A stretch of DNA of 64,000 bases from Malacoraja senta (taxonomy: Eukaryota), in assembly GCA_038087875.1 (NCBI GenBank), contig CM075977.1, positions 111,228,001 to 111,292,000 on the forward strand. Reading direction: 5' to 3'. Below, one piece after another: positions 35,196 to 59,456 of the stretch (position 1 is the stretch's first letter; each line of letters begins with the position of its first letter). Under the pieces are notes generated by a model. It worked only from the letters and a program-made list of their open reading frames with translations, had not been told where the DNA came from and made no database searches. Both the position numbers and the translations under genes were made by a program.

Positions 35196-35349
35196 ACTAT
35201 ATTAGTTGTGTTTACTGCCTGTTACGCTGCTACAAGTAGGAATTTCATTGTTCCATTGTCGGTACATATATCGAACTCTTGCACTCAGTACTAGATTACT
35301 ATGCAAGCTGGCTTTCGTTCTGTAACAGTTTTCAGAACATCTGAGTCCT

Positions 35350-40029: not shown

Positions 40030-40405
40030 ACTAAATACAGTGTGGAAACAGGCCTATCGGCCCAACAACCCTATGCCGACCAACATGCTGCATTTGCACA
40101 TATGCTTCTGCCCCATATCCCTCTAAACCTGCCCCATCCCTGTAACTCTCTAACTGTTTCTTAAACATTACAACAGTCCCTGCCTCAACTACCTCCTCCG
40201 GCAGCTTGTTCCATACACCCGCCACCCTTTGTGTGTAAAAGTTACTCATCAGGTTCCTATTAAATCTTTCCCCCCCTCACCTTAAACCTATGTCCTCTGG
40301 TTCTCGATTCCACCTGCTCTGGGCAAGAGCCTCTTGTGCGTCTACCTGATCTATTCCTCTCATGATTTTGTGCACCTCTATAAGATCACCCCCTCATCCT
40401 CCTGG
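40030..40405 (-). mobile_element. CR1 3' fragment
   Basis: Reverse-strand CR1 UTR (GAGGAGGTAGTTGAGGCAGG, GAGAACCAGAGGACATAGG). Confidence 0.75.
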
Positions 40406-40489
40406 TTGTCAGAGCATGAGGACGTAAGACGTTTGACCAGGTCACCCTTCCTCAGCCATTAAGTAGGATCATGGCACACACGGGCAGTC

Positions 40490-40800
40490 AGGGTGGCGCA
40501 GCGGTAGAGTTGCTACCTTACAGCGAATGCAGCGCCGGAGACCCAGGTTTGATCCCGAGTACGGGTGCTGTCTGTTCGGAGTTTGTACCTTCTTCCCTTG
40601 ACCTGCGGTGGGTGTTCTCTGAGATCTCCGCTTTCCTCCCACACTCCAAAGACGTGCAGGTTTGTAGGTTAAATGGCTTGGTAAATGTAAAAATTGTCCC
40701 TAGTGGGTGTGGGATAGTGTTAGTGTGCGGGGACCGCTGGTCGGCGCGGACCCGGTGGGCCGAAGGGCCTGTTTCCGCGCTGTATCTCTAAACCAAACTG
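40490..40800 (+). mobile_element. HE1-like V-SINE
   Basis: GGTGGCGCAGCGGTAGAG, GGTTTGATCCC, V-domain and tail. Confidence 0.88.
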
Positions 40801-41544
40801 AAAACTTGACCTTTGCACCATCTTTATGGCCCGATCCACACACTCCTTGATTCCTTCACTATGCTGCAATCTATCCATCTCTGTTCTCAGCATCAAGATT
40901 GAAAGGAGATTTGCGGGGCAAGTTTTTTGACACAGAGTTTGCCCGGTGCTTGAAACACGCTGCCAGGGAGGTTTACAGAGTCATATAGCGTGGAAACAGG
41001 CCCTTCAGACCAACTTGCCCACACAACCAGGTGGCGCAGCAGTAGAGTTGATGCCATATGGCACCAGAGACCCGGGTTTGATCCTGACTACGGATGCTGT
41101 CTGTACGGAGTTTGTACTTTGGGGGTGTGGGGGGGGGGGGGGTGGTCAGGAAGATGACAGCAGGAAGGAGGCAAGTGCTCTCTGCACGGCCATATCCCGC
41201 TGAGTTTATTCAGGTACTTGCTGGGAGCCCTGTGTCCATCTCCCCCCCCGCCCCTGTCTCTGCAAGTCGCACTAACGCGAGGGTCGCTCTATTTTTACCA
41301 ATGACGTACGCTCCGTCCGGGGCCGGCTATACTCAGGAGAGAGGGCCAGGAAGGCAGGTAGCGAGGCAAAGCTTCAGGCCATGGGTTTTCCGAGCACAGC
41401 CCTTCCTGAAGTACACTTAACCCTTTCACTGGGATCGTTCACTGTCCACCTTCCAGTCAAATGTCCAACTGCAGCAACCTTTTGTTAAGTATCGCTTGCT
41501 CCGCACCCATGGTCTCTAACCCTTTGCTAATCCTGAGAGATGAT

Positions 41545-41735
41545 CCATGTTCTCCAGAGATGCTGCCTGACCCGCTGAGTTACTCCAGCACTCTGTGAAA
41601 CGTCACCTATCTATGTTCTCCACAGATGCTGCCTGACCCGCTGAGTTACTCCAGCACTCTGTGAAACGTCACCTATCCATGTTCTCCGGAGATGCTGCCT
41701 GACCCGCTGAGTTACTCCAGCACTTTGTGTCTTTT
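41545..41735 (+). repeat. 66-bp tandem trimer of Penelope-derived unit
   Basis: ATGCTGCCTG at 41560, 41626 and 41692. Confidence 0.9.
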
Positions 41736-41964
41736 CTTGGTCTGAAGAAGGGTCCCAGCCCCAAACTTCACCTGTCCATGTTCTCCAGAGATGCCGCCTG
41801 ACCCTTTAGACTTTAGAGATACAGTGTGGAAACAGGACATTCAGACCACGCCGACCAGCGATTCACTTGCACTATCCTACACACTAGGATAATTTACAAT
41901 ATTACAGAAGCCAATTCACCTACAAATGTGTACGTCTATGGACTGTGGGAGGAAACCAGAGCAC

Positions 41965-42164
41965 NNNNNNNNNNNNNNNNNNNNNNNNNNNNNNNNNNNN
42001 NNNNNNNNNNNNNNNNNNNNNNNNNNNNNNNNNNNNNNNNNNNNNNNNNNNNNNNNNNNNNNNNNNNNNNNNNNNNNNNNNNNNNNNNNNNNNNNNNNNN
42101 NNNNNNNNNNNNNNNNNNNNNNNNNNNNNNNNNNNNNNNNNNNNNNNNNNNNNNNNNNNNNNNN
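41965..42164. other. Assembly gap (200 N)
   Basis: Run of exactly 200 N, probably an arbitrary-size scaffold join. Confidence 0.98.
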
Positions 42165-43810
42165 TGTCATTGCACAAGAGGTCCCAGGCAGTGAGGCAGC
42201 AACTGTACCACGTGCGCCACCATGTGGCAGCTAAGATCGTAGCATGCTCAGGAATGAGTGATGGACTGAGATCTTAGAGAGAGTTCAGGAGGCTACATAT
42301 AAAGATAGACACAAAAAGCCGGAGTAACTCAGCAGGACAGGCAGCATCTCTGGCGAGAAGGAATGGGTGACGTTTCAGGTCGAGACCCTTCTTACTGATC
42401 ACCATGAGTAAATAACAGGCAACAGGAAAAGAAGGAGGGGAATTGGATCGTCACCACAGAAACCTCGACCATTCCCAGAAAATTGATGGAGGCCATTATG
42501 GTCTCCACCCTTCCTGAGGTCTTCTGTTACTGGCCCTGTTTTGTTCTGGCCTCCTCTATCTTTCAGCGTGAAAAAGTGTTGCGACCCGAAACGTCACCTA
42601 TTCCTTTACTCCAGAGATGCTGCCTGGCCCGCTAAGTTACTCCAGCATTTTGTGCTTGTCGTTCCTTTCTCTCCACCATTACGGCTTGGTCTGCTGAGGT
42701 CTTCCAGCCGTATAGAAAGATAGAAAGATAGAACATTGGTGCAGGGGCAGGCCATTTGGCCCCTCGAGCCAGCGCCACCATTCAATATGATCATGGGTGA
42801 TCATCCACAATCAGTACCCTGTACCTGGTAACAAGGTACAGTGAAAAACCTTTGTTTATGTGCTTTCCAACCCTCATTTCTTGTTTCATTGACAACGGCG
42901 CATGTGATGCTCACTGTCCCAAGTTCTGAGTCATAAGTTCTTGAAGCAGATTTCGGCTGTTTGCCCTATCAAGTCTACTCCGCCATTCAATCACGGCTCA
43001 TCTATCGTTCCCTCTCAACACCATTCTCCTGCCTTCTCCCCATAACCCGTGACAACCTACGAATCAAGAATCTATCAATCTCCACCTTAAAAATATCAAT
43101 GGACGGCCTCCACAACCGTCTGTGGCAATGACTTGCACAGAATCACCACCCTGCGACTAAAGAAATTCCTCCTCATCTCCTTTCTGAAGGAACATCCTTT
43201 TAATGTCCTCATTTCCTCCTGAAGGGTTATTTCAAACCTCAGATCAATGTCTTCCAGCACTTTACTTACCCCCCCCCCGCCCGCCCCCCACACAATTTCT
43301 TTCCACCTGAAAATCCACAATTTGAAATGTTGATTCCAAAATGTATTTGGTTAATGACCTTTGTGAACCACAGTGGCTTCACTATGATTCTTGTGTGGGG
43401 AGAAATATGACAAAGTGCTGCAGGAGTGAACGGGTCATGCAGCATCTGAGAAGGGAACAGGATGGACAACATTAGAACGGCCTGACCTGAAATGTCCTCT
43501 TTCTTTTTCCCTTTGGCTGGCACAGTGTCGCAGCGATAGAGTTGCTGACACATAAGGCCACAGACTCGGGCTCAAAAGGGTAAGAAGTGTGAAAACGCAC
43601 ACCTCCAGGTTCAGGGACAGTTTCTTCCCGACTGTTATCAGGCAACTGAACATTCCTACTGGAACTGGAGAGCGGTCCTGAACCACTATCTACCTCCATT
43701 GGAGACTTTTGGACTGTCTATGATCAAACTTTACTGGACTTTTATCTTGCACTAAATGTTATTCACGATATTACCGACGCGATATTGATTACCGACTCTT
43801 TCTATTCCAG

Positions 43811-44191
43811 CAGCCACCCATACTTGGCATTTTCCAACTGCCGATGAAGTGTCTGCCATGGAAGGAGGCTCGGCTGTGTTGCCGTGTACGTTCACCCACC
43901 TGGCCACTGATCACATCCTCAAACTCGAGCTGCGCTGGTGGAAAGGTGACCTGCGGAGTTTCAATGCCATTATTACGTGTCTGTTCACTGCTCCCTTCAC
44001 TCCTGGTGCGATGAAGTGAGGCATGAGGCAGGAGGAAATCGGTTTAGGTTCATCGGGAACCTCAGTCGGGAGGATGCCTCGATAATAGTGGAGCGACTGG
44101 GACAGGAGGGATAATGGTCTATATATGTGCAATGTGAACGACATCGATGGATTTCCTCTATTACAAAAGGTCACTCACCTGACTGTGAGAG
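43811..44191 (+). pseudogene. Ig V-set exon 1 (Siglec-15-like) with two compensating 1-bp indels; pseudo-exon or assembly error
   Basis: Acceptor TCTATTCCAG, donor GTGAGG, phase 1/1, 381 nt. Repaired translation: ATHTWHFPTADEVSAMEGGSAVLPCTFTHLATDHILKLELRWWKGDLRSFNAIITCLFTAPxHSWCDEVRHEAGGNRFRFIGNLSREDASIIVERLGQEDNGLYMCNVNDIDGFPLLQKVTHLTVR. Confidence 0.85.
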
Positions 44192-46064
44192 GTGAGGAAG
44201 GCTCTAATTGTACCAATAAAGGTGGAGCAGTGGTAGAGCCATTGCCTCTCAGTGGCAGAGACCCGGGATCGATCTCCCAATCCACCTTGTTGCAGCCTTT
44301 GCAAATTGGTTTTACCTGCACTTTCTCTGTCGCTGCAGCACATTCTACTGCACTCTGATACTTTTCTTTTTTGCGCCAGCTCGTATACTCAACCTCTCAA
44401 CATTTCAACATAATAGCGGTAGAGTTGCTGCTTCACAGCGCAAGTGAGCCAGGTTAGATCCTGACTACGGATGCTGTCTGTACGGAGTTTGCACGTGATC
44501 CCTGTGACCCCGCGAATTTTCTCCGGGTGCTCCAGTTTTCTCTCACATTTGAAAGACACATGTTAGTCGGTTAATTGGATTCTGTAATTTGCCCTAAATG
44601 CACCAAGGTACAGTGAAAAGCTTTTGTTTGCGTGCTGTCCAGTCAAGAAAATGCTATACATGAATACCATCAAGCTGTCCACAGTACACAGATAAAGAAT
44701 AAAGGATGCAAAGATGCTCTTTTAGTGTAAACATATGACATTGTAGTCTGATAATGTCCCATTTAAGATAGTTCAAAGGGTCTCCAATGAGGTGGATGGG
44801 AGGTCAGAACCGCACTCCAGTTGGTTAGAGGACCATTCAGTTGCCTGATAACAGCTGGGTAGAACTGTCCCTGAATCTGAAGATGCGCATTTTCACACTT
44901 CTGTATTTCTTGCCTGGTGGGAGAGGGGAGACGAGGGGGTGACTGGGGTGAGAGTCGTCCTTGATTATGTTGCTGGCCTTGGGTAAAGTGTACACGGGAT
45001 TAATGGAAGGGGAGGTTGATTTGTGCGATGGGCTGGGTTATGTCCACAACTCTCTGCTATTTCTTGCGGTCTTGGATGGAGCTTTCCCAAACCATGCTGT
45101 GATGAATCCGAATACACCTGACAGTAAACTAAACTAGTAACTGGCCCTTCTAGTACCAATACATCCAACCAGGACAATTGGTTTGAAACACAAAATACTC
45201 TAGTTGCTTCAATCCCAAGCAAAACAAGGTACTGGAGGAACCCGGCAATTCAGGCAGCATCGGTGGAGGGATTAGACAGGCTGTCCATTCCCTTCACAGA
45301 TGCCGCCTGACCCACTGAGTTTCTCCCTCACTTTGATTTAATTGGGCATTAATTGGTTGATTGATGCATCATTATTAAGTTTACCGAGATGGAGTGAAAA
45401 TCCTTGTTTTGCATGCTAAGGTCAGAAAGTCGTCAGGAATAGAGTAGAATTAGGCCATTCAGTCCATCAAGTCTGCCCCACCATTCAATCATGGCTGATC
45501 TATCTCTCCCTTCTAACCCCATTCTCTGTCTTCTCCCCATATCCTCTGACACCCATTATGTTGAAATCATATCATAGTCATACAGTGTGGAAACAGGCAC
45601 TTCGGCCCAACTTTCCCATGATGACCAAGATGCCTCCTCTACACTAGTGTTACCTGCCCATCTTTGGCCCGTATTCCTCTAAACCTTTTTGTATCCATGT
45701 ACCTGTCCAAATGTCTTCTAGATTCAGTTTAGTTTAGAGATACAGCATGGAAACAGGCCCTTTGGCCCACTGAGTCCCCCGCAACCAGCAATCACTAGTT
45801 CTATGCAATCCCAATTTGCATCCTACGCATTAGGGGCAATTTACAGAAGCCAATTAACCTACAAACTTGCACGTCTTTGGAATGTGGGTGGAAACTGGAG
45901 CACACAAGGAAAACCGGGATGGAGCCGGGTCTCTGGCACTGTTACTGCCGCCACTGTGCCGACCTTATGTTGAAATGTTGATAAGTTGAGTATATCAGGA
46001 AGTGCAGAAGAGAAAATTATCACAGTGCAGAATGTGGCGCTACACCCACAGAGAAAGTGCAGGT

Positions 46065-46975
46065 AAGAAAATGTGTGTTTGTGTGTGTCTGGTGCTGCAT
46101 TTGTGGCTGCATGTGTGTCTGTGCGAGTGCATGTGTGTGTGAGTACGTGTGTGTCTATCTCTATGCGTGTGTGTCTGTTTGTTTATGGGCGTGTGCATGT
46201 GGTTGTATATCTATGTGTGGTGTGATTCTGTAGGGTGCGTGCATGCACGTATGCGTCAATGTCTCTTGGTTTGTGTGTCATTGGGTCATTGTGTATGTTT
46301 TGTATGAATGTGTGAGTACGTGTATGTGTGTCCATTTGTATGTCTACTGCGTGCGAGTGTCTTTATGTATGTGTGTGTGTGTCACTTGCTGGAGTATGTT
46401 TGTGTTTCTGTCTATATTCCTGTATGTGTGCACATCTCATTTGTGTGCGTGTGTATATGCGGCTGTGTGTACGTGTCACTGTGTATGTGTCTCGATTGTG
46501 TGTATGTCAGTGACTGTGTGTGTGCGTCTCATTTCTGTGTGCATATATCTGTGACTGTATGTGTGCATCTGCATCCCTATATTGTGCAGGCATGGGTGTG
46601 TGTGTGGTATGTAAGTGTGGGGTGTGTGTATGGCTGTGTGTGTGTGGGGTCTGTGTGTGTGTGTGGGGGGTCTGTGTGTGTGTGTGTGGGTCTGTGTGTG
46701 TGTGTGAGCATGTGTGTGTGTGTGGATGTGTGGGTCTGTGGGTGTGTATGTGGGTGTAGGTGTGTATATGTGGGAATATGTGTGTCTGTGTGTGTGCACG
46801 TGTTTAAACATGTGATAGCACATGCCTGTTTGTGAGTGTGTACATGTGTATGTGTGCATGTTGTGTGTATATGCGTGTGTGTGTGCGCATGTTGTGTGTA
46901 TGTGTGTGTGTGTGTGCATTAATGCCTATGTGCGTGTGTTCGTGTGCATAAGTGTGTGTGTAAGTGATGTTCGTA
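46065..46975. repeat. Long degenerate (TG)n-rich tract
   Basis: Directly visible; it generates spurious Cys/Val and His/Thr ORFs. Confidence 0.95.
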
Positions 46976-47349
46976 ACGCTGGACATAACTGTGATGGGGA
47001 TTTGCTGGGAGGTGACTTCTGAAGTCACTGAACGGAGGTGGGGAGGGAGGGGAGGGGAGGAGGAGGGGAGGGGCGGGGAGGGAAGGGTAGGGGAGGATAG
47101 GGGAGGGAGGAGACTGTGGTGCGAACGACGGAAGGTGGGATTTAATGAGACCTTCTCTGACCTTCACCACCCATGTGAGATCTTCAAAGCTCATCATGAC
47201 CGTGTCCATGGATGTTGAGCCCTGCATCGATCTGTGGGGAGAACTCTGCCCAGCACTACACCTGGAGTTCTCTCAGTCCTGTACGTCAGGGCTGCCTCTT
47301 CTCATCCTTGCCCATTAAGATGTCTGCCGACATGTCCAGTGGAGGTTTA

Positions 47350-50300
47350 CTGGGAGTAATAAAGATGGAGTTAAAGGGGAAGTGAGTACAGGAAAAGTTA
47401 CAAAAGACTCCCGAATTAATGGAGAGGAATGTTCGAGAAGGGATAAGAGAGTAAGGTCAGGGCCAATTGTGAGCGGTGTGCGAGGGGAGGTGAATACCGG
47501 AAGTCAAAGTGTTGTATATGAATGTGCAAAGGATAAGAAATAAAGTGACGAGCTTGAGGCTCAGTTAGAAATTGGCAAGTATGATTTTGTGGGAATTACA
47601 GAGACATGGCTGCAAGAGGGCCAGGGCTGGGAACTGATATTCAAGGGTATACCTCCTATCGAAAAGCCAGACAGGTGGGCAGAGGGGGTGGGGTTGCCCA
47701 TGTTGGTGAGGAATGAAATTCACTGCCTTGCAAGGGGTGACATTAAAACAGGAGATGTGGAGTCAGTATGGATAGAACTAAGGGAATTGTAAGGGTAAAA
47801 AGACCCTAATGGGACTCATCTACAGGCCTCCAAACAGTAGCCTGGATATTGGGTGCAAGTTGAATCAAGAGTTAAAATTAGCATGTCGCAACGGTAATGC
47901 TACAGTTCTTAAAGGAGATTTCAACATGCAGGTAGACTAAGTAAATCAGGTTGGTACTGGACCCCAAGAAAGGGAGTTTGTGGAGTGTCTCTGTGATGGA
48001 TTCTTTGAGCAGCTTGTACAGGAGCCTACCAGGGGGAAGGCAATTCTGGATTTAGTGTTATGTAATGAACCGGATTTGATAAGGAAACTCGAGGTAAAGG
48101 AGCATTAGGAAGTAGTGACCATAATATGGCAAGTTTTAATCTACAATTTGAGAGGGAGAAGGTAAATTGGAGGTGTCCATGTTACAGTGAAAAAAGGGGA
48201 CTATGGAGCCATGAGGGAGGAGCTGGCCAAAGTTGACTGGTAAGATATCCAGCAGGATGACAGTGGAACAAAATGGTAGGTATTTCTGGGAATAATATAG
48301 AAGGTGCAGGATCAGTTCATTCCAAAGTGGAAGAAAGATTTCCAAGGGGAGTAAGGGACGACTGTGGCTGACAGGGAAGTCAGGACAGTATAAAAATAAA
48401 AAGAGAAGAGTACAACGTAGCAAAGATGAGCGGAAAACAAGAGGATTAGGTAATGTTTAAAAGAGCAACAGAAGACAACTAAAAATGTAATACGGGGAGA
48501 AAAGATGAGGTATGAAGGTAAGCTAGCCAAGAATATAAAGGAGGATAGTAAAAGCTTCTTTAGGTATGTGAAGAGGAAAAAAATAGATAAGACCAAAGTT
48601 GGACCCTTGAAGACTGAAAAAGGTAAATTTATTATGGGGAACAAGGAAATGGCAGATGAGTTGAACAGGTACTTTGGATCCGTCTTCACTAAGGAGGACA
48701 CAAACAATCTTCCTGATGTACTAGTGGCCAGAGGATCTGGGGTGACGGAGGACTGAAGGAAATCCACATTAGGCAGGAATGGTGTTGGGTAGACTGATGG
48801 GAGTGAAGGCTGATAAATCACCAGGGCCTGATGGTCTGCATCCTAGGGTACTTAAGGAAGTGGCTCTAGAAATCGTGGATGCATTGGTGATAATTTTCCA
48901 ATGTTCTATAGATTCAGGATCAGTTCCTGTGGATTGGAGGGTCGCAAAAGTTATCGCAATTTTTAAGAAAGGCGGGGAGAGAGAAAACATGGAATTATAG
49001 ACCAGTTAGCCTGACATCGGTGGTGGGGAAGATGCTGGAGTCAATTGTAAAAGATGAAATAGTGGCACATTTGGATAGCAGTAACAGGATTGGTCTTAGT
49101 CAGCATGGATTTACGAAGGGGAAATCATGCTTGACTAATCTTCTGGCATTTTTTGAGGATGTAACTAGGAAAATGGACAAGGGAGAGCCAGTGGATGTAG
49201 TGTACCTGGACTTTCAGAAAACATTTGATTAGGTCCCACATAGGAGATTAGTGGGCAAAATTAGGGCACATGATATGGGGTAGAGTGCTGACATGGATAG
49301 AATATTGGTTGGCAGACAGGAAACAAAGAGTAGGGATTAACGGGTCCCTTTCAGAATGGCAGACAATGACATGGGGTACCGCAAGACTCGGTGCTGGGAC
49401 CGCAGCTATTTACAATATACATCAAAGATTTAAATGAAGGGCTTCAAAGTAACATTAACAAATTTGCAGATGACATTAAGCTGGGTGGCAGTGTGAACTG
49501 TGAGGAGGATGCTATGAGAATGCAGGGTGACTTGGACAGGTTGGGTGAGTGGGCAGATGCATGGCAGATGAAGTTTAATGCGGATAAATGTGAGGTTATC
49601 CACTTTGGTAGCAAAAACAGGAAGGCAGATTATTATCTAAATGGTGTCAAGTTGGGTAAAGGGGAAGTGCAACGAGATCTGTGGGTCGTAGTTCAGTAGT
49701 CAATAAAAGTAAGCATGCAGGTACAGCAGGTAGTGAAGAAAGCTAATGGCATGTTGGCCTTCATATCAAGAAGAGTTGCGTATAGGAGCAAAGAGGTCCT
49801 TCTGGAGTTGTACATGGCCATAGTGAGACCACACCTGGAGTATTGTGTGCAGTTTTTGTCTCCTAATTTGTGGAAGAACATTCTTACAATTAAGCGTAGG
49901 TTCACAAGGTTAATTCCCGGGATGGCGGGACTGTCATATGCTGAGAGAATGGAGCAGCTGGGCTTGTATACTCTGGAATTTAGAAGGATGAGAGGGTATT
50001 CTATTGAAACATATAATATTATTAAAGGTTTGGACACGCATGAGGCAGGAAACATTTTCCTGATGTTGGGGGAGTCCAGAACCAGGGGTCACAGTTTAAG
50101 ATTAAGGGGTAAGGCATTTAGAACATTTTCACACAGAGAGTTGTGAGGCTGTGGAATTCTCTGCCTCAGAGGGGGGTGGAGGCCACTTCTCTGGATACTT
50201 TCAAGAGAGAGCTTGATCGGGCTCTTAAAGTTAGCGGAGTCAGGGGATATGGGGAGAAGGCAGGAACGGGGTACTAATTGTGGATAATCAGCCATGATCA

Positions 50301-50368
50301 CATTGAATGGCGGTGCTGGCTCGAAGGGCCGAAAGGCCTACTCCTGCACCTATTGTCTATTGTCTCTT
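47350..50368 (+). mobile_element. Long decayed CR1 LINE (APE endonuclease through 3' end)
   Basis: KVLYMN, VGITETWLQEG, GDFNMQVD, SDHN, PGPDGLHPRVLKE, QHGFTKGKSCLTNL, DVVYLDFQK and FADD motifs with many frameshifts and stops; CR1 tail. Confidence 0.93.
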
Positions 50369-50459
50369 GTCTGTTATGAGAATGATCCCAGAAATGAGTG
50401 GGTTAACATATGATGGCACTGGGCCTGTATTGATGGCACTGGGCCTGTATTGGCTGGAG

Positions 50460-51129
50460 CAGGGGCGGAAATCGCTATCAAAACATGGGGGGGGGGACAA
50501 AATTTCTTGGTGGCCACTCGCGCACACACACACATGCAGGCTTCGGCCGTGGGCCCTGTGGACGGTAACACCGGGGGCTGATCTGGTTGGTGACCGACTC
50601 CGAACTCCAGCAACAGCAGCTTAGTCCGCCCTGTATCGTGGTGCATCAATCGGCCCGTTTGTGGGGCCTTTCATCGCCCGGCATGGCTTAAAATGGGCCG
50701 CAGGATCTTCCATCACCCGGCGTTGCGATGAAAGGCCCCGCGAACGGACCAATTCAAGCTCCGCTCTATGATCTTTGCTCCACCAGGACGTCTCCCTCCT
50801 CCAATCACCGCGCTCTATCCTTAGTCCCACCCCACTACTTCCGCCTCTGACCGACACCTCCCTCCTCCAATCATCACACTGAATCATCATGTCTCGCCAC
50901 CCCCCCACTGCCTGCTGACCGACGTCTCTCTCATCCAATTGGCGCCCTTGATCATCAGTTCCACCCCCACTGTCTCGCGGAAAGCGGAGATTTTTAATAG
51001 TTTTTCAACCGAATTTCAAAATTCGGATTATAAAACATGGGGTGGATTGTCCCCCGCCTCTCAAAACATAAGGGGGACGTGCCCCACCCTGTCCCCCCCC
51101 CTGCCCCCCCCCCTGGATTTCCGCTCATG
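50460..51129. mobile_element. hAT-type MITE inserted in a CR1 fragment
   Basis: Imperfect TIRs CAGGGGCGGAAATC / GATTTCCGCTCATG; perfect 8-bp TSD GGCTGGAG at 50452-50459 and 51130-51137. Confidence 0.88.
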
Positions 51130-51648
51130 GGCTGGAGGATAGAAGGATGAGAGGGGCTCTTCATAGAAACTTACTGAATAGTGAAAGGCCTGGATCGGGT
51201 GGATGTGGAGAGGATGTTTCCACTAGTGGGAGAGTCAAGGACCAGAGGCCACAGCCTCAGAATAAAAGGATGTACCTTTAGAATGGAGATGAGGAGGTGT
51301 TTCTTTAGTCAGATGGTGGGGAATCTGTGGAATGCATTGCCACAGAAGGCTGTAGAGGTCAAGTCAATGGATATTTTTGAGGAGATTTGCCAGATTCTTG
51401 ATTAGTACGGGTGTCACAATTTACGAGCGGAAGGCAGGAGAATGGGTTTGAGAGGGTAAGATAGATCAGCCATGTTTGAATGGTAGACATGATGGGCCGA
51501 ATGGCCTAATTCATTTCACATCACTTATGAACATGACACATCTAAAGCTCATTCAGCATGAGTCCAGCATCCAGTTCCTATTTCCAGTTTACAGTATCTC
51601 CAGCTCCCTCGTCCTGCTTCTCTTGACCGGTGCCTGTCGTTCCCTCAG

Positions 51649-51996
51649 CTCCCAGCGGGAATGTCTCAGTGGTGACTGGGACTGAGGGGGCTTCGGCCAC
51701 GCTACCCTGTGTGTTCTCACCGCTTCCGCTCGACCACGTCCTGCTCGCGGTCACATGGATGAGGAAGGATCCCTACCGACACATCGTCACGTTCATTCCC
51801 CAAACTGATCGATCTTGGGCGGCGGAGAACGGAGCAACTCGGTTAGAGCTGGTCGGGAACCCAGAGCGGGGAAACGCCTCAACCAGGATAAAGCAGCTGA
51901 GGGTGGAGGACAGTGATGGCTACCTGTGTCTGGTGGAGATCGTGACCTCGACCTACCATCTGTTCCAGTGTGAGATCCAACTGCAAGTTGCAACAG
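51649..51996 (+). CDS. Ig V-set exon 2 (Siglec-15/NKp30-like), intact
   Basis: Acceptor TTCCCTCAG, donor GTAAGA, phase 1/1, 348 nt; GTEGASATLPCVF...VTWMRK...RLELVGNPERGNASTRIKQLRVEDSDGYLCLVE...IQLQV. Confidence 0.92.
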
Positions 51997-53320
51997 GTAA
52001 GAAACCCTATTAACTCACGCTGCAGTGTGCAGCGAAGGTATTTAGGTTTAGCTTTAGTGCTAGGTTTTTGTTTTATATTGTCACGTGTACCGAAGTATGG
52101 TTAAAAAGCTTTTGTTTGCAAGGCTATCTGATCAAGTCATATAATACTGTATGCGAATACAATCAAATCAAACACAAGTACCAGAGGAATTGATCGGGTA
52201 GACGCACACTCTTGCCAGAGCAGGGAACTCGAGAACCAGAGAACAATGTTTTAAGGGGAAGGGGGAAAGATTTTATTGGAATCTGAGGGGTAACTTTTTC
52301 ACACAAAGGGTGATAGGTGTATGGAACGAGATGCAGCAGCAGGTAACTGTGGCAGGTACTATCACAACGTTTGAGAAGCAATTAGACAGGTACATGGATA
52401 GGACAGGTTTAGAGGGATATGGGCCAAATGCCGACAAGTGGGATTAGTGTAGATGATAGACACAAAACACTGGAGTAACTCAACGGGACAGGCAGCATCT
52501 CTGGAGAGAAGGAATGGGTGATGTTTCGGGTCGAGACCCTTCTTCAGGCAGATCTAAACCAGCATCTGCAGTTCTTTCCTACACATTAGTGTAGATGGGA
52601 CATGTTGGTCGGTGTCAGTGTGGGCAATTTGGGCTGAAGGGCCTGTTTCCACATTGTATGACTCATTGACTCTATAGAGCAAAGAGAAAGATATCAGATT
52701 GCAGAATATGCAGAATTACAGCGTGGAAACAGGCCCTTCGGTCCACCGAGTTGGTGCCAACCAAACGTACAAACTCTGTGCAGACAGCACCCGTAGTCGG
52801 GAATGAAACCGGGTCTCTGGTGCTGTAAGGAAGCAACTCAACTGCAGTGCCAACGTGCCACCCACCCACATTACAGAAAACTAGTTTCTTCATATTGTAG
52901 GGTTACATTTCCAGAGACCATTGTCTGCAATGAGGTAGGTAGGTTGGAAAATCAGAACTGTGTCAGATCTTATGGATGGACGGGTCAGAAGTCTCTATGG
53001 AGTTTGTACGTTCTCCCTGGGACCGTGTGGGTTTTCTCCGGATGCCCCGGTTTCCACCCACACTCCAAAGACATAGGGGTTTGTACGTTACTTGGCTGCT
53101 GTAAATTGTTCCAAGGTTTTAGGATGCAAAAGTAGGATAAAATAGAATTAAGAGGGCGGAACAGCAGTAGAGTTACTGCCGCACAGCGCCAGAAACCCAG
53201 TTTCGATCCTGACTATGGGTGCTTTATATAAGAAATTTTCACATTCCCCCTCTGACCCTGTGGTTTTTTTTTCCGGGTGCTCCGGTTTGCTCCCACATTT
53301 GAAAGACACACAGGTTTGTC

Positions 53321-54192
53321 ACAAATGCCACTAGGGGCGCTGCATTGATGGCAGCCTCTGCCTACAGTCTGTCTGTTTTTCTATTTTGAAAAATGTTCAG
53401 TCTGTTTTAAAAGTGTGTTTTTGGAGGTTTCTTTAGTATTTCTACGTGGGGGAGGGGGGTAGGGGGGTAGGGTAAGGGGTAAACCATTTCCCAGTCACTT
53501 CCTGGCGAGAACGCAACTATTCCCCGAGTCGCATCCTCGCCCCCCTCCTCGGGGCCTACCACCTGGATTGGCGCGGACTTTCCTGCCGGGGACCCGGACC
53601 AGAGTTTCAGCAGCGGCGGCGGCGCGATGATACATGTATACATCGCGGAGCGGGTGATTGCTTACCTGGATCGCCGTTGAAGCTCTGGAGTGTTGGGCCT
53701 GCTGCTTCAACATCGCGGAGCTGTGGTCCGTAGAGCTTCCAGCGCGGGCGGCGCTGACTTCAATATCGCGGAGTCCTGGGGCCCTTTGCTGAGGGCCGCT
53801 AGCGTTGAATCTCCGCCCAGCGCGGCCTGTGGACTTCGGGAGCTGCTGACTCCGGTAAGAAGTGGCCGATTCGGAGGTCCAAGCCGCTGAGGATGTCCTC
53901 CCGTCCCGACGTTGGACTGCATTCACCGCGGCGAGCGGGCCTGAACATCGGGCCTCCCGTAGCGGCGACAGCGGGGTGGTTCGGGAGCCCCCCGACCACG
54001 GGAGGACAACAGTGGAGGATGACTAAAATTTGGAGCCTTCCCTCACAGTGGGAAACTTTGATCCCGCTGTGTTAAAGGCTATCGTGTTCTATGCTCTTTA
54101 TTATTCGTATGGCTGTATGGTGACAACACATTTCACTGTACCAATTGGTACATGTGACAAATAAATGTATCTTGTATCTTGTATCTTGTATT
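53321..54192 (+). mobile_element. CpG-rich non-autonomous retroelement with Rex1-like tail, inserted into a SINE
   Basis: SINE text CAGGTTTGT resumes as AATTGGCTTCTGTAAATTG after the insert; tail GGTACATGTGACAAATAAATG(TATCTTG)n. Confidence 0.65.
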
Positions 54193-54554
54193 TTGTAATT
54201 GGCTTCTGTAAATTGCCCCAAGTGTGTAGAAAGGTAGGACACCATAGAACTAGTGTACGTGTGATTATTGGTCGGCGGCGACGCTGTATCTCTAAACACT
54301 ATTCTAAGTTGGCTGCATTGTCTTGGAAAGTTTTTAGCTTCTTAAAGGTTGTTAGTTAAGAAATGGAGAGTGTTGCATCACTCCTGACTTGTGCTCTGTA
54401 AATGGTGTCATGTCTTTGGAGTGTCACAAGGTGGCTCCCTCAGACAGGATGTCATTATAGCTCTTGCGGTCACAATATTTTAGGTTTAGGGTTGTATTTG
54501 TCACGTGTGAAAAGAGAGCTTTACAATGAACAAAAGCTCTTCACAGCTTTGTTT

Positions 54555-54890
54555 CGCATGCTTTAGACATTGGACTTTAGAGATACATACTGTAGATACA
54601 GTGCGGAAACAGGACTTCGGCCCACGGAGACTGCACTGACCAGTGATCACCCTGTATACTAGCACTATTCCAAACACTGGGGACAATTTATAATTTTATC
54701 AAAGCCAATTAACCTACAAACTTGTACGTCTTTTGAGTGTGCGAGGTGACCGGAGCAACTGGAGGAAAAACCCAAGGGATCACAGGGAGAACGTTCAAAC
54801 TCCACACACAGACAACATCTGAGATTGGGATCAAACCAGGGTCTCTGGCGCTGTGAGGCAGCGGCTCTGTCAGTGGTGCCACAGTGCTGC
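54555..54890 (-). mobile_element. HE1-like V-SINE
   Basis: Complete copy on the minus strand. Confidence 0.82.
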
Positions 54891-54970
54891 ACTTTGTTGC
54901 AGGATGGTCAGTTGATGGAGCAGCTGGAAATAGTTGGGACTACAAAATGCTGGTGTTGAGATGATTAACC

Positions 54971-55144
54971 CAAGATACAAGATACAAGATACATTTATTT
55001 GTCACATGTACCAATTGGCACAGTGAAATGTGTGGTCGCCATACAGCCATACGAATAATAAAGAGCACAGAACACGATAGTTTTTAACACAGACATCCCC
55101 ACACAGCGGGATCCAAGTTTCCCACTGTGAGGGAAGGCTCCAAA
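54971..55144 (-). mobile_element. 3' fragment of the same element family as 53321-54192
   Basis: Reverse complement of 54029-54192 with a ~14-nt indel. Confidence 0.85.
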
Positions 55145-55769
55145 ATGGTACCAGAGCAAACACAACCAACTATCTTACACTGTGACTCCAGCCCATCCAG
55201 CTCTACAGTCCCCATTATTATTAATCTTCCCCACTGCCTCAATGTCAAGGGCAACTGTGTGACTAATGTAATCTGTACGCTCCATTTTGTTGGTCCTTGT
55301 TGGAGGGAATTGTGTGTTTGACCTGGATGGGCAGCACATAAAAAAAATCTCGCAGAATGGTGACGAGTTTCTCAAACAAGTCGTGTTATTCAAGGCCTTC
55401 ACACTAAATACTGGGGAACACTCTGAGGGAACCCAAAGTGTTTCAATGATTCACAGCATCAATGGGCTTTTGGTTACAATGGCCGCAAAGAGATTCTACA
55501 TTTTGAAATAATTCAACGACGCTTCTCGGCTGCTTTCATCCTTGTTTTTTTCCCCAGGACCTCTTTTACCTTCTATTCCTTGTTATTTAGAAAAGCATTC
55601 CCCCATTTGTCTGACAGTGGGTGCAATAAAGGACATGTCTATTTTCTGATCAGTTCTATTGCTCTCAACCTGGTTTTACAGCCTCCTATCTTTACTCCAG
55701 CAAGCTATGCCTTGTACTCTAAACTCATCCTAAATCTATTTATTGCCTCTCCTAGTGTGAGTATCTTCC

Positions 55770-56480
55770 CATCTCCACCCCTTTCTGCTTTCCGCTGGGA
55801 CCATTCCCTCCGTAACTCCCTGGTCAACTCATCCATTCCCACCCAAACCACCCTCTCCCCCGGCATTCCCCTGCAACCGCAGGAGATGCAACACCTGTCC
55901 TTTTACCTCCCCCCCTCGACTCCATCCAAGGACCCCGACAGTCTTTCAAGGTGAGGCAGAGGTTCACTTGCACCTCCTCCAACCTCATCTATTGTATCCG
56001 CTGTTCCAGAAGTCAACCCCTCTACATCGGCGAGACCAAGCGTAGGCTCAGCGATCGTTTCGCTGAACACGTCCGTTCAGTCCGCATTAGCCAAGCTGAT
56101 CTCCCGGTGGCTCAGCACTTCAACTCCCCCTTCCATTCACAACCAGACGTTTCTGTCCTGGGCCTCCTCCATTGTCAGAGTGAGGCCCAGCGCAAATTGG
56201 AGGAACAGCACCTCATGTTTCGCTTGGGTAGTTTACACCCCAGCGGTATGAACATTGACTTCTGTAACTTCAGGTAGCCCTTACTTTCTCTCTCCATCCC
56301 CTCCCACTCCCCCTTCCCAGTTCTCCCACTAGTCTTACTGTCTCCACCTACATTCTTTCTCTGTCCTGCCCCGTCCCCTGACATCAGTCTGAAGACGGGT
56401 CTCGACCCGAAACGTCAACAATTCCTTTTCTCCATAGATGCTGCCTCACCCACTGAGTTACTCCAGCATTTTGTGTCTAT
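55770..56480 (+). mobile_element. Penelope-like element 3' part with open GIY-YIG ORF
   Basis: ORF 55951-56277 LIYCIRCSRSQPLYIGETKRRLSDRFAEH; hammerhead core at 56389-56416. Confidence 0.9.
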
Positions 56481-57030
56481 CTGAGTATTTACTAAGTTAC
56501 CTTTAGTATGTTGGCCTCATTTTGCATCATGCTTCCCCACAATGTTAGCTCTTGGGTTAACACCAGTCCTTCACTGATATACTGGGCATGTCTCCCTCAT
56601 AATGCCCATTTTAATGTTTATCGAGTCTTTTAGGTTTAGATTTAGGTTTATTATTGCCATGTGTAACCATGTACAGTGAAAAGCTATATTTTGCACGCTA
56701 TCCAAACAGATCAGATAATAGTACACGTAAACACAATCAAACCAAACTCGAGTACAATAGGTAGAGCATAGAAGATACAGGGTGCAGAATATAGTTCTCA
56801 GCATTATAGCACACCAGTTCCACAGACAAAGTCCAATGTCCTCAATGAGGTAGAGGTGACAGTACCCTAGTATTTGCAAGGACCGTTCTGAAGCCTGATA
56901 ACAGAGGGGAAGGAGCTATTCCTGAGTCTGGTGATGCATACTTTCAAGCTTCTGTACCTTCTGCTGGAGATAGTAAAATGAATTGTCTCCATGTTATTGA
57001 TCGAGTCTGGTTTGACTTCTCTCTCTTCAG

Positions 57031-57130
57031 CCCCACAGTTTTCCTACCCTCTGATACTGTGTATTCCACTTGGAGTGAAAATCCTTGTCCTTTTGGTGAT
57101 GGGCTTCATTTTAATCAGGGACAAAATCAG
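57031..57130 (+). CDS. Transmembrane exon of the Ig receptor, with an intramembrane lysine
   Basis: Acceptor CTCTCTCTTCAG, donor GTATGT, phase 1/2 in frame with V2; (A)PQFSYPLILCIPLGVKILVLLVMGFILIRDKI(R). Confidence 0.85.
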
Positions 57131-57454
57131 GTATGTAATATTGCTGCGAGATACTTGCCTTCCGATGTCCGCAATGTGATTCATGGTCTTCTTCTGGTGA
57201 TTCATCTAAAACATTGATTCCTTTTCTCTCTCTGTAGATGCTGCCTGACCAACTGAGTGTTCTCAGTGTTCTCTCCCCTCTCTCAATCTCTCTGTGTCTA
57301 TCCATTGATATTTACGGCAAACACACTGACACTAGATCTTCCTTGACTACACCCAGCCCCACCCTGTCTCCTGCAAGATTGCCATTCCTTTCTCCCTCTG
57401 TTCTCACGATGCTTTCCCCTTTCGGACATCTGAGAAGTTATTTAAATTCATTCA

Positions 57455-57535
57455 AACTTATTCATTCAAACGTATTCATTCATTCATTCATTCATTCATT
57501 CATTCATTCATGCATTCATTAATTCATTCATTATT
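57455..57535. repeat. (TTCA)n microsatellite
   Basis: Directly visible. Confidence 0.9.
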
Positions 57536-58761
57536 CAGGAAATGTGGATCTGCACAGTCATTATCCTTTCTTCCCAGGTTTTCTCTGTTTTTCTCCGTGT
57601 CAAACCTTGTCTACCCACTCCAGCATCCAATTTGTCTATTGCACACAGCATGGAAACAGGCCCGTTGGCCCCATCTGATATAATCCCATGTGCCGGCATT
57701 TCACCCATATCCCTCTAACCCTTTCGTGTCCATTGCGGACATTGGACTTTGTCTCTGGAACTGATGCGCTACAATGCTGAGAACTATATTCTACACTCTG
57801 CATCTTCCCATTTGCTCTACCTACCGTACTTGTTTGACTTGTTATGTTGTTATGTGTAGCATAATCTGATATGATTGTTTTGCATGAAAAACAAAGCTTT
57901 TAACTGCATCTCAGTTCATATGACAATAATAAACGTGAACTTAAAGCGGAAAAGAAATTCAGGGGGTGAAGGAGGGTCCTGACCCAAAATGTTCCCTGTC
58001 CATTCCCTCCACAGACGCTGCATGGCCTGATGAATTTCTCCAGCACTCTGCGTTTTGCCCAGCATCTGCAGTTCCTTGTGTCTCCCATGCTCTGCTCCGT
58101 CTCTCCCCATGGACCTTCACATTCTTTGCCTGAATAGCTCAGATGTGATGGTATTCAGAGAATGGAGCGCTGCAAGTCCAGAAGGGGGTGAGCGAGTGAG
58201 GGTTAGGATTAGGCTTATTATTGGCATGGCTATTAAGGTACAGTGACAAGCTTTGCTTTGCATGCCACCCAATGAGATCAGATAATATGATACATAATTG
58301 CAATCAAGTGACACTCAAGTACAACAGGTAGAGCAAAGGGGAAGATCCACCAGAGATGCTCCAGGGTTCTCCAGCGATGCTGCCTGACTCACTGAGTTAC
58401 TCCAGAACTTTGTGTCATACGTTCATGTTCATAAGTTCAAGAAGCAGAATTAGGCCATTCGGCCCATCAAGTCTAAGCCACCATTCAATCATGGATGATC
58501 TAACTTCCCCTCTCAACCCACTCTCCTGCCTTCTCCCCCATAACCCCGGCACCCGTAATAATCAAGTGTCTTTCTTTGATAAACCAATATCTGCAGTTCC
58601 TTGACACACGGGGATTTCCCTCCACAGATGCTGCCTGAACTGCTGAGTTGTCACCGCCTACCCTGTAACCATTCCGTGATGCTACCAATCAATGGTTAAA
58701 AAAACAGATTTCCCTGTGGAATTACTGAAGCTCATTTTAACTGGTCTTGTTCTGTCCACAG

Positions 58762-58777
58762 AAGGAGTCGGGACTGA
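58762..58777 (+). CDS. Probable last coding exon: short cytoplasmic tail (R)RSRD*
   Basis: Acceptor CTGGTCTTGTTCTGTCCACAG at the 5' side of a non-repetitive stretch; phase 2 gives AG|A AGG AGT CGG GAC TGA. Inferred only from the splice signal and phase. Confidence 0.55.
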
Positions 58778-59456
58778 TCCACCGCTGGAGGCTGAGACAC
58801 CCATTTTCATCGTCCACATGCACATCTGCCGCTCTTTCCACACTGCCTGCCTCCGCCGATCTCAGCTGTGCTTGTGAAGGCAATCATTCGATGCGCGTTG
58901 CATGGGCCCCAAGTGCAAATTTCGTCCTGCCTACGAGCTATCCATCACAATTGTACACCACCGTGGCATTCCCACTGGGATTTATGTACGATCATTCCCA
59001 ATAATAATATTGGACATGAATACCAGTAACTAAACTTCACAAACACCCAGGGCGAGAAATTTGGGAACATCTATTTTGAGCTGAGTGCGGGGAAAGAGTA
59101 GCGAGGAGTAAGAAGGAGAGGCGATGATGAGTGTGGAGGGAATAGGTCAGGGGAGTGGTGGGATATGGAGATTTAGATTAGAGATACAGCATGGGACTAC
59201 ACCCTTCGGCCCACCGATCCACGCCAACCATCAATCTCCCACGCATATTAGTTCTAGGCTATCCCACTTGCTCAACATAAGTTGGGAATGTACCTACAGG
59301 CAGACATAATAAAAAGCATTCACGACCAAAATCAACCACAAGCGAAGAAACAGTAGAAGGATAAACAGTTGCAAACATATGTACCTTTCACAAAGTTGCA
59401 TTAATTCATAATTATTCACACAAGTATAATTGTACAGAATTGCACACAAAATTATT

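What the first reader, a model, noticed from the sequence alone, without database searches (positions are those of the whole stretch)
43811..58777. Siglec-15-like activating receptor with V-V-TM(Lys) architecture and no sialic-acid arginine
Seen: four phase-compatible exons give V1-V2-short stalk-TM(LGVKILVLL)-RDKIRRSRD*. Established (from memory): human Siglec-15 has EVSA..G.AAVLPCTFTH, an extra C-C' cysteine pair, GRFRLLGNP, YFCRVE (essential Arg) and TM LGFKALLLL pairing with DAP12. V1 matches this pattern (EVSAMEGGSAVLPCTFTH, ITC..WC, RFRFIGNL) but has YMCNVN, and V2 has YLCLVE, so neither domain keeps the Arg. A second V domain replaces the C2 domain. Inference: a cartilaginous-fish Siglec-15/NKp30-related receptor that signals via a DAP12/DAP10/FcRgamma-type adaptor and recognises a non-sialic ligand, possibly one of an uncharacterised family. 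The signal-peptide exon was not found and may lie in the gap.
Basis: partly seen in the sequence, partly recalled or inferred. Interest (0 to 1): 0.8.

Follow-up and report, generated by a model that had tools for sequence, protein, structure and literature searches.

The report
Skate Siglec-15-like activating receptor gene
This is a real gene for a cell-surface immune receptor in a skate-like fish; it belongs to a large shark-and-ray family related to the sialic-acid sensor Siglec-15 that I found described in no paper, and its lineage lost the sugar-binding arginine long ago.

Summary
The four exons exist with the stated phases and motifs: V1 43814 (or 43811)-44191, V2 51649-51996, TM-Lys 57031-57130, tail 58762-58777.

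It has a 1-nt loss near 43997 and a 1-nt gain near 44108. Short-read contigs from two samples lack both changes, and the Rhinoraja orthologue is intact. These are most likely assembly errors, so the gene is probably functional.

The locus is collinear with Rhinoraja longicauda, and Leucoraja erinacea has a full-length annotated orthologue with the same short tail.

The gene sits in a well-supported clade of skates, sawfish, stingrays and mantas, all lacking the strand-F arginine. That clade is part of a large elasmobranch family of two-V-domain receptors. Some members have a TM lysine and a short tail; others have a long ITIM tail.

The family V1 profile hits human Siglec-15 first in the PDB (E 2.6e-22). 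It keeps Siglec-15's extra cysteine pair.

Adaptor pairing and a non-sialic ligand remain inferences. No RNA data were available. The signal exon is not in the assembled sequence.

The scan already found this family 10 kb and 60 kb beyond this window. I found no paper describing it.

The parts
41965..42164 (.). Assembly gap of 200 N, 1.65 kb upstream of V1; possible place of the missing signal-peptide exon (not filled, not looked up)
   Evidence: N run found. Collinearity with the Rhinoraja locus resumes directly after the gap: window 42165-42297 matches L001 7730-7858. The orthologue's signal exon at L001 3573-3633 has no match anywhere in the window.
43814..44191 (+). V1 exon: Siglec-15-like V-set domain with the extra Cys pair and Asn in place of the strand-F Arg (YMCNVN). 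Phase 1 at both ends. An alternative acceptor lies at 43811.
   Evidence: Sequence and three-frame translation. 86% identical to the intact Rhinoraja exon. Best PDB hit of its first piece is Siglec-15, E 0.0018.
43996..43998 (+). Site where the window lacks one base relative to the orthologue and to all read contigs (first frameshift)
   Evidence: Alignment gap. 'Put in behind 43997: C' in 100.3 of 100.3 depth in X3, and in the spanning X4 contig. With the extra C the reading is APFHSWC, as in Rhinoraja (APVHSWC) and Leucoraja (APFHSSC).
44106..44108 (+). Site where the window has one extra G (GGG instead of GG), the second frameshift
   Evidence: Alignment gap. 'Left out 1 at 44108' in the X3 contig that otherwise matches 44038-44299 exactly, and in the X4 contig. 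Without it the reading is GQEDNGLY, as in both orthologues.
44192..51648 (+). Intron 1 (7.5 kb), inflated by a TG/CA-rich low-complexity block (about 46000-47000) and a LINE reverse-transcriptase remnant (about 47590-50150)
   Evidence: ORF list. Pfam RVT_1 on 49391-49696. The Rhinoraja intron is about 2.1 kb and lacks this 5 kb.
51649..51996 (+). V2 exon: intact second V-set domain (YLCLVE, no Arg, no extra Cys pair). Phase 1 at both ends.
   Evidence: Pfam V-set E 8.9e-14. 77-79% identical to the skate orthologues. In the family-profile search its best single-domain PDB match is the Siglec-15 V domain, 44.9 bits.
51997..57030 (+). Intron 2 (5.0 kb) with a Penelope-type GIY-YIG remnant at 55951-56277
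   Evidence: Pfam GIY-YIG E 5.7e-05. Collinear blocks with L001.
57031..57130 (+). Stalk and transmembrane exon with a central Lys (…LCIPLGVKILVLLVMGFILI RDKI). Enters in phase 1, leaves in phase 2.
   Evidence: 95% identical to Rhinoraja. The same V2-TM join appears in annotated proteins P0005 and P0202.
58762..58777 (+). Coding part of the last exon in the TM-containing form: RRSRD then stop (TGA 58775-58777)
   Evidence: The Leucoraja orthologue ends RRNRD at the same place. Rhinoraja has TGC there and runs six codons further.
58762..58877 (+). The same last exon read in the frame that results if the TM exon is skipped: 38 open codons (EGVGTDPPLEAETP…). This is the possible tail of a soluble isoform.
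   Evidence: The frame is open and ends at the same stop in the window and in Rhinoraja. Annotated TM-less isoforms of Pristis (P0214) and Mobula (P0212) end in the homologous …TDPLLEAENP… tail.

Best explanation
The stretch is a probably functional gene for a type I membrane receptor of about 290 residues. Its order is signal peptide (exon not in the assembled sequence), a distal V-set domain of the Siglec-15 type, a second V-set domain, a short stalk, a transmembrane helix with a central lysine, and a nine-residue tail without motifs.

Shown:
- the exon structure;
- the two V-set domains;
- the specific kinship of V1 with the Siglec-15 V domain, including its second disulfide;
- Asn in place of the arginine that Siglec-15 needs for sialic acid;
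- one-to-one orthologues in two other skate genera;
- membership of an Arg-less clade present across skates, sawfish, stingrays and mantas;
- membership of a large elasmobranch family with lysine-TM short-tail members and ITIM long-tail members.

Inferred:
- the lysine pairs in the membrane with an acidic residue of an ITAM or YxxM adaptor of the DAP12/DAP10 kind, so ligand binding activates the cell;
- without the arginine, V1 no longer binds sialic acid in the canonical way and recognises something else, or a glycan by another mode;
- ITIM-bearing paralogues give the opposing signal;
- skipping the TM exon may give a soluble form.

The two frameshifts in the window's V1 are most likely consensus errors of the assembly.
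For: Exons and phases.

V-set domains: V2, E 8.9e-14; orthologue P0202, two V-set stretches, E 6.3e-28. The AF2 model of the orthologue's ectodomain has pLDDT 88 and pTM 0.82 and shows two V-type sandwiches. Foldseek's best matches are two-V proteins: JAML, CD226 and pIgR.

Siglec-15 kinship. Family V1 profile against 7zoz gives E 2.6e-22 and 82 bits; next come JAML 49, pIgR 46, CD33 40 and NKp30 30. The aligned cysteine pair and CRVE motif are visible in the alignment. Human Siglec-15 features come from PMC10264397 and PMC7226832.

Orthology: collinear blocks through introns at 82-92% identity with Rhinoraja L001. The Rhinoraja V1 is intact. Full-length Leucoraja P0202 has the same architecture, YQCNVN and the RRNRD stop. 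The window, P0202 and P0005 form a clade with 99% support inside a 9-row batoid clade with 98% support. All members of that clade with a residue at the column have N, H or Y there; one row has a gap.

Frameshifts absent from reads of two samples.

Family make-up. Activating type: 13 with Arg, 16 without. Inhibitory type: 16 with Arg, 1 without.

Link to true Siglec-15: Pristis P0254 has V-V-C2-TM(K). Its V2-C2-TM segment aligns collinearly with human Siglec-15 V-C2-TM, including LGFKALLLL.
Against: - No RNA evidence: the only RNA-like runs (X1, X2) covered repeats but not the exon.
- The signal-peptide exon was not found.
- As assembled, V1 is broken.
- V1 evolves at about the neutral rate against Rhinoraja: dN 0.14, dS 0.165, intron distance 0.117. 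That fits diversifying selection, but also relaxed constraint.
- Read contigs can miss rare variants, and X3 may come from the assembled individual, so a real private frameshift allele is not excluded.
- A 2014 survey found no FcR gamma chain in sharks (PMC4016189). I did not test whether skates have DAP12 or DAP10.
- The association of Arg loss with the activating type has too few independent pairs to be significant.
Confidence: 0.65

Rival explanations
1. It is a pseudogene. The two V1 frameshifts are real in this genome, the signal exon has been lost, and the exons are decaying at the neutral rate.
For: The window sequence has a -1 and a +1 shift with three stops between them. No signal exon is in the assembled sequence. 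V1 omega is 0.85 and its dN is about the intron distance.
Against: Both shifts are absent from the read contigs of two samples, and no contig supports the window's version at 43997. The two shifts cancel exactly, and the stretch between them still encodes the conserved WC…GNRFRFIGNLS…DAS…VERL in the shifted frame. Orthologues in Rhinoraja and Leucoraja are intact. The TM exon is 95% conserved. All splice sites are kept.
Confidence: 0.12
2. It is simply the skate orthologue of Siglec-15 and still a sialic-acid receptor, binding through another basic residue or through V2.
For: Siglec-15 is the top PDB match. The TM motif LG-x-K-x-L-x-LL is shared with the human protein. NCBI names several family members 'Siglec-15'.
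Against: There are dozens of paralogues per genome rather than one conserved gene. The architecture is V-V, not V-C2. The essential Arg is Asn here and in the two skate orthologues, and no member of the batoid clade has Arg there. A closer candidate for the real orthologue exists in Pristis, with a Siglec-15-type C2 domain.
Confidence: 0.1
3. It is a JAML/CD226-type two-V adhesion or co-stimulatory molecule, and the Siglec-15 likeness is only general V-set similarity.
For: Foldseek's best matches for the two-domain model are JAML (E 1e-17 to 1e-18, TM 0.47-0.48) and CD226. NCBI calls some members 'junctional adhesion molecule-like'.
Against: The JAML profile score is 49 bits summed over two domains, against 82 bits for the single Siglec-15 V domain. 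The Siglec-15-specific second disulfide and the LPCTFTHP and CRVE motifs are shared. The TM-lysine versus ITIM-tail pairing across paralogues is the mark of paired immune receptors. TM-scores under 0.5 reflect domain arrangement, not kinship.
Confidence: 0.05
4. It is an NKp30-related receptor.
For: There are weak PDB hits of the V1 piece to NKp30 at E 0.7-0.8. The family profile gives 30 bits.
Against: The match covers only the first 45 or so residues (A-B strands) and lies 52 bits below Siglec-15. NKp30 has one V domain and none of the extra cysteines.
Confidence: 0.02

Closest known systems
Siglec-15 (human structure 7ZOZ; conserved from fish to mammals)
   Same: V1 is the closest solved-structure relative by sequence (82 bits, E 2.6e-22 for the family profile). 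The canonical disulfide, the unusual second disulfide of the C'-C'' region and the LPCTFTHP motif are all present. Most family members also keep Y-x-C-R-V-E. A central TM lysine sits in an LG-x-K-x-L-x-LL context like human LGFKALLLL.
   Different: The second domain is V-set instead of C2. The arginine needed for sialic acid (R143) is Asn. The tail is nine residues long. The gene is one of dozens of paralogues, including ITIM-tailed ones, whereas Siglec-15 is a single conserved activating gene.
Paired CD33-related Siglecs of primates (Siglec-5/14, Siglec-11/16) and arginine-mutated Siglecs
   Same: Near-identical ectodomains are coupled either to an ITIM tail or to a charged TM with a short tail. 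Ectodomains evolve fast. The arginine is lost repeatedly in some members; here it changed state about 10 times on the family tree. The pairing concept is described in PMC4042635 and PMC5701461.
   Different: This is an independent radiation in elasmobranchs from a Siglec-15-like, not CD33-like, V domain, with V-V architecture. No ligand or adaptor data exist.
JAML and CD226 (two tandem V-set domains)
   Same: They share the membrane-distal V plus membrane-proximal V arrangement and are the best structural matches of the model.
   Different: Sequence similarity is weak. JAML and CD226 signal through their own tails, are single genes, and lack the Siglec-15-type second disulfide.
Elasmobranch V-V-C2-TM 'Siglec-15' proteins (Pristis pectinata P0252, P0254)
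   Same: They have two N-terminal V domains related to those of this family (E about 1e-39 to the family profile). P0254 has a TM lysine.
   Different: They keep a C2 domain and a TM that align with human Siglec-15. They look like the link between canonical Siglec-15 and the C2-less family to which this gene belongs.

Membership tests
Siglec-15 | N-terminal V-set domain homologous to the Siglec-15 V domain | tested here: met
   The window's V1 piece has 7zoz as best PDB hit, E 0.0018. The family V1 profile against 7zoz gives E 2.6e-22 and 82 bits, about 33 bits above the next hit.
Siglec-15 | Second intradomain disulfide (human C95-C104) besides the canonical C64-C142 (PMC10264397) | tested here: met
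   The Cys pair is invariant in 39 family V1 domains and aligns with the human pair. In the window it is …IITC…SWC….
Siglec-15 | Arginine on strand F essential for sialic acid (human R143) | tested here: not met
   The window has YMCNVN. The aligned column is N in the window, Leucoraja and Rhinoraja, and N, H or Y in the rest of the batoid clade. It is R in 47 of 69 family rows.
Siglec-15 | Membrane-proximal C2-set domain | tested here: not met
   The second domain is Pfam V-set, E 8.9e-14. The model shows two V-type domains.
Siglec-15 | Transmembrane lysine that recruits DAP12/DAP10 | tested here: inconclusive
   The lysine is present and central in the TM, in a context like the human TM. Adaptor binding cannot be tested here.
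Siglec-15 | Single conserved orthologue per genome | tested here: not met
   Many paralogues occur per elasmobranch genome on one chromosome. Two Rhinoraja members lie 535 kb apart, with tandem neighbours.
Elasmobranch two-V Siglec-15-like receptor family (operational, no published name found) | V1(Siglec-15-like)-V2-TM order encoded by phase-1 exons, and placement inside the family tree | tested here: met
   Exon phases. The same exon order is seen in Rhinoraja paralogue P0003. The window gene sits in a 99%-supported skate clade and a 98%-supported batoid clade.
Paired activating/inhibitory immune receptors (functional class) | Related ectodomains joined either to a charged TM with a short tail or to an uncharged TM with an ITIM tail | tested here: met
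   There are 30 lysine-TM and 17 long-tail members among 69 ectodomain rows. ITIM-like motifs such as xCTYASI and VxYAxV occur in the long tails. The signalling itself was not tested.
NKp30 (NCR3) | Single V domain homologous over its whole length | tested here: not met
   Only 30 bits, restricted to profile positions 8-53.

The most novel reading that the evidence does not exclude
An arginine-less, lysine-TM lineage has been kept across skates, sawfish, stingrays and mantas inside a Siglec-15-derived family of two-V paired receptors. It would be an activating sensor for a non-sialic, perhaps pathogen-derived, ligand. That would make it the elasmobranch counterpart of activating KIR/LILR or Siglec-14/16-type receptors, with a conserved soluble isoform made by reading the last exon in a second frame.
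Probability: 0.3. Interest if true: 0.75.

Novelty: new variant of a known kind. Interest (0 to 1): 0.58.

Why it matters
Siglec-15 is the most ancient and conserved activating Siglec and a drug target in bone disease and cancer. Its evolutionary history outside bony vertebrates is barely charted.

This gene and its relatives suggest that sharks and rays turned a Siglec-15-like V domain into a large, fast-evolving family of paired activating and inhibitory receptors with a new two-V architecture. One lineage gave up the sialic-acid arginine early and was nevertheless kept.

That gives a natural experiment on how Siglec binding sites are re-purposed. It also offers a candidate innate receptor system for cartilaginous fish, where a 2014 survey found no LRC-type (KIR/LILR) or classical Fc receptors (PMC4016189).

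A practical point: the window's assembly carries single-base errors in coding sequence. Apparent pseudogenes in this genome should be checked against reads.

Tried and rejected
- Signal exon. I scanned 30000-43810 for ATG-hydrophobic-GT phase-1 exons. Candidates at 37374-37428 and 30517-30607 have no conservation with Rhinoraja and were dropped. DNA of the Rhinoraja paralogue's and orthologue's signal exons, and leader peptides of family members, found nothing in the window.
- RNA evidence. Two run searches gave only two small RNA-like runs of another organism. Laid on V1, they covered repeats only. Reads were laid on the V1 frameshifts, so the joins 51996-57031 and 57130-58762 were not tested with reads.
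- Premature stop in the tail. I first read the TGA at 58775 as a lesion, because Rhinoraja has TGC there. I rejected this when the Leucoraja orthologue proved to end at the same place.
- Fetching bony-vertebrate Siglec-15 sequences for a rooted tree. A region search with the V1 of Rhinoraja paralogue P0003 and a family-profile search returned elasmobranch proteins only, though 12 of the 132 profile hits were not listed. No outgroup-rooted phylogeny was made.
- The Leucoraja locus look-up for P0202 found no record.
- The ESM Atlas feature search gave only generic V-set clusters.
- Arg loss versus activating type. Raw counts are striking, but only about 2 informative independent pairs exist, so I make no claim.
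- Literature. Seven searches found no paper on this family. The library lacks most subscription journals, so absence is not proof.

Full report
**What is in the sequence**

The + strand between 43.8 and 58.8 kb holds four exons with matching phases.
- V1 begins at a NAGNAG acceptor (43811 or 43814) and ends at 44191, phase 1 at both ends.
- V2 is 51649-51996, phase 1 at both ends.
- The stalk and TM exon is 57031-57130. It enters in phase 1 and leaves in phase 2.
- The last exon starts at 58762 and gives RRSRD and a TGA at 58775-58777.

V2 is a clean Pfam V-set domain (E 8.9e-14). The TM exon encodes …LCIPLGVKILVLLVMGFILI followed by RDKI, with the lysine in the middle of the helix.

V1 is not one open frame in the window. 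The first part runs in one frame up to …IITCLFTAP. The middle (…SWCDEVRHEAGGNRFRFIGNLSREDASIIVERLGQ…) is in another frame. The end (DNGLYMCNVN…LTVR) is back in the first frame. Three stops lie in the original frame in between.

Aligned with the orthologous exon of Rhinoraja longicauda, the window lacks one base near 43997 and has one extra G near 44108. The Rhinoraja exon is intact.

Runs X3 (unique depth about 50) and X4 (about 3) cover introns as well as exons, so they behave as DNA.
- Every X3 contig across 43997 carries an extra C (100.3 of 100.3 depth).
- The X3 contig that otherwise matches 44038-44299 exactly lacks one G at 44108.
- An X4 contig shows both changes.

With those two changes the reading is …APFHSWC… and …GQEDNGLY…, as in the orthologues. 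All X3 contigs also read T instead of G at 43940. The simplest account is that the window's consensus has single-base errors and V1 is intact in the animals sequenced. A private broken allele cannot be fully excluded, because contigs show presence better than absence and X3 may be the assembled individual.

**Orthologues**

A search of V2 against 1.8 billion representatives found a family of two-V proteins. The nearest, P0005, is from Rhinoraja longicauda. Its locus (L001) is collinear with the window through exons and introns at 82-92% identity: V1 86%, V2 83%, TM exon 95%, last exon and 3' flank 90-96%.

The little skate protein P0202 (289 aa, named by NCBI 'hepatitis A virus cellular receptor 1-like isoform X2') is a full-length orthologue. 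It runs signal peptide, V1 with YQCNVN, V2, …LGVK…, RDKTRRNRD then stop. It supports the V1-V2 and V2-TM joins and the short tail. I had first taken the TGA as a lesion because Rhinoraja has TGC there. The Leucoraja protein shows it is a normal end.

The signal exon of the Rhinoraja orthologue (L001 3573-3633, MGFLSIWLLTVQLLVSVHGN then GTAAGT) has no counterpart in the window. Collinearity resumes immediately after the 200-N gap at 41965-42164. I did not try to fill it.

**The family**

Searches with a full-length member and with a family profile returned 90 and 132 proteins, and every listed hit was from sharks, rays or skates (12 of the 132 profile hits were not listed). No chimaera or bony vertebrate appeared. 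[quoted passage not shown]

Members lie in clusters. Two Rhinoraja genes are 535 kb apart on one chromosome, with tandem neighbours about 11 kb away.

Among 69 ectodomain rows, 30 have the lysine-TM short-tail form and 17 have an uncharged TM with a long tail carrying ITIM-like motifs. The rest lack a TM in the annotated product.

On a tree of V1+V2 (IQ-TREE quick search, SH-aLRT support), the window gene groups with the Leucoraja and Rhinoraja orthologues at 99%. It falls inside a 98% clade of nine rows that adds Pristis, Mobula (two species), Hypanus and Hemitrygon. Every member of that clade with a residue at the strand-F column has N, H or Y; 47 of 69 family rows have R. The Arg-less state is therefore old, and the lineage has been kept.

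Arg loss is commoner in activating members (16 of 29) than in inhibitory ones (1 of 17). Phylogenetically independent pairs are too few to test this.

**Relation to Siglec-15**

A profile of 39 V1 domains hits the human Siglec-15 chain 7zoz first in the PDB: E 2.6e-22, 82 bits. JAML follows at 49 bits (two domains summed), pIgR at 46, sodium-channel beta-2 at 43, CD33 at 40 and NKp30 at 30, the last over the first 45 residues only.

The alignment includes W-S-M, the LPCTFTHP stretch, the extra cysteine pair, RFR-x-x-GN, VERL and Y-x-C-R-V-E. The Siglec-15 structure paper describes C64-C142, the unusual C95-C104 bridge and R143 as the key sialic-acid contact (PMC10264397). The TM lysine binds DAP10/DAP12 (PMC7226832).

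V2's best single-domain PDB match is also the Siglec-15 V domain (44.9 bits). This suggests V2 arose by duplication of a similar domain.

Two Pristis proteins (P0252, P0254) have V-V-C2-TM. The V2-C2-TM part of P0254 aligns collinearly with human V-C2-TM, including CRAEGEPP against CTAEGEPP and the lysine TM. They look like a link between canonical Siglec-15 and the C2-less family.

I could not fetch bony-vertebrate Siglec-15 sequences for a rooted tree. Descent of the whole family from a Siglec-15-like ancestor is therefore well suggested but not proven.

**Structure**

An AlphaFold2 model of the orthologue's ectodomain, built with the family alignment, has pLDDT 88 and pTM 0.82 and shows two V-type sandwiches. 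Foldseek ranks two-V proteins first: JAML, CD226 and pIgR domain pairs, with TM about 0.47-0.48. That speaks for the architecture, not for kinship.

**Rates**

Against Rhinoraja:
- V1 has dN 0.14, dS 0.165 (omega 0.85).
- V2 has dN 0.129, dS 0.223 (omega 0.58).
- The intron distance is 0.117.
- The TM exon has five non-synonymous and no synonymous changes in 32 codons.

Framework residues are kept while loops change. Together with open frames in three genera, this fits a fast-evolving, probably diversifying, ligand-binding ectodomain better than decay, but it does not prove it.

The read contigs also hold a second V1 version at equal depth. It has 12 differences in 197 nt, 10 of them non-synonymous. 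It is either a very divergent allele or a close paralogue.

**How it most likely works**

By analogy with Siglec-15 and other lysine-TM receptors (established knowledge: such receptors assemble with DAP12-type adaptors through a membrane Lys-Asp contact), the protein would sit on leukocytes. It would bind its ligand with V1 and signal through an ITAM or YxxM adaptor, opposed by ITIM-bearing paralogues. With Asn in place of the arginine, the canonical salt bridge to sialic acid cannot form, so the ligand is probably different.

None of this was testable here. I did not establish that skates have DAP12 or DAP10. A 2014 survey did not find the FcR gamma chain in sharks (PMC4016189).

**Prior knowledge and earlier scan notes**

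Seven full-text searches found no paper on this family.

The scan itself has noted the same family in this genome 10 kb and 60 kb beyond this window's end, and follow-up agents reached the same reading (s1-140173, s1-140085). The gene here is thus the first member of a cluster that continues downstream.

**Verdict**

This is a real and probably intact gene. It is an arginine-less activating member of an elasmobranch Siglec-15-like two-V receptor family that is known only from automatic annotation.

Noticed in passing
window 58762-58877 (+); L001 26891-27006: The last exon is open in two frames. One gives the five-residue end of the TM form. The other gives a 38-codon tail (EGVGTDPPLEAETP…) that would follow V2 if the TM exon is skipped. 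That second frame ends at the same stop in Rhinoraja and matches the tails of annotated TM-less isoforms in Pristis and Mobula. It could be a conserved soluble isoform.
   Followed up: partly
window 43871-44067 (read contigs of X3 and X4): A second version of V1 is present at equal depth, with 12 differences in 197 nt, 10 of them amino-acid changing. Several of them match the residue seen in Rhinoraja or Leucoraja. It is either a very divergent allele or a near paralogue not in this window.
   Followed up: partly
window 43940: All X3 contigs read T where the window has G (Trp to Leu, or Phe in the second version; Rhinoraja has Phe). This is another sign that the window's consensus has base errors in coding sequence.
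   Followed up: no
L001 4993-5808 (Rhinoraja), minus strand: An inverted copy of the V2 exon plus about 500 nt of its upstream intron (87% identical to window 51131-51948) lies between the signal exon and V1 of the Rhinoraja orthologue. No such copy is in the window.
   Followed up: no
proteins P0252 and P0254 (Pristis pectinata): These are V-V-C2-TM proteins whose V2-C2-TM part aligns with human Siglec-15 V-C2-TM (E 2.4e-21). One has a TM lysine and the other a long tail. They are candidates for the true elasmobranch Siglec-15 and for the ancestor-like form of the C2-less family.
   Followed up: partly
window 24557-25225 (-) and 3907-4182 (-): These look like exons of a LIMK/TESK-type protein kinase on the opposite strand. 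[26 protein letters not shown] matches the LIMK1 kinase domain (E 1e-06). The receptor gene therefore lies upstream of, or next to, a kinase gene transcribed the other way.
   Followed up: partly
window 12128-14117 (+): Endogenous retrovirus remnants: an ORF with an MLV-type integrase C-terminal domain (E 2e-10) and a 373-aa ORF matching the gamma-type ENV polyprotein family (E 1.2e-11). Observed only.
   Followed up: no
window 46000-50150 and 55951-56277: Intron 1 is about 5 kb longer than in Rhinoraja because of a TG/CA-rich low-complexity block and a LINE reverse-transcriptase remnant. Intron 2 holds a GIY-YIG (Penelope-type) remnant.
   Followed up: partly
protein set: Many annotated family proteins of about 200 aa start at the conserved Met of …ASIMVERL… inside V1. 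This probably means the gene models missed the short signal exon, not that the genes are truncated.
   Followed up: no
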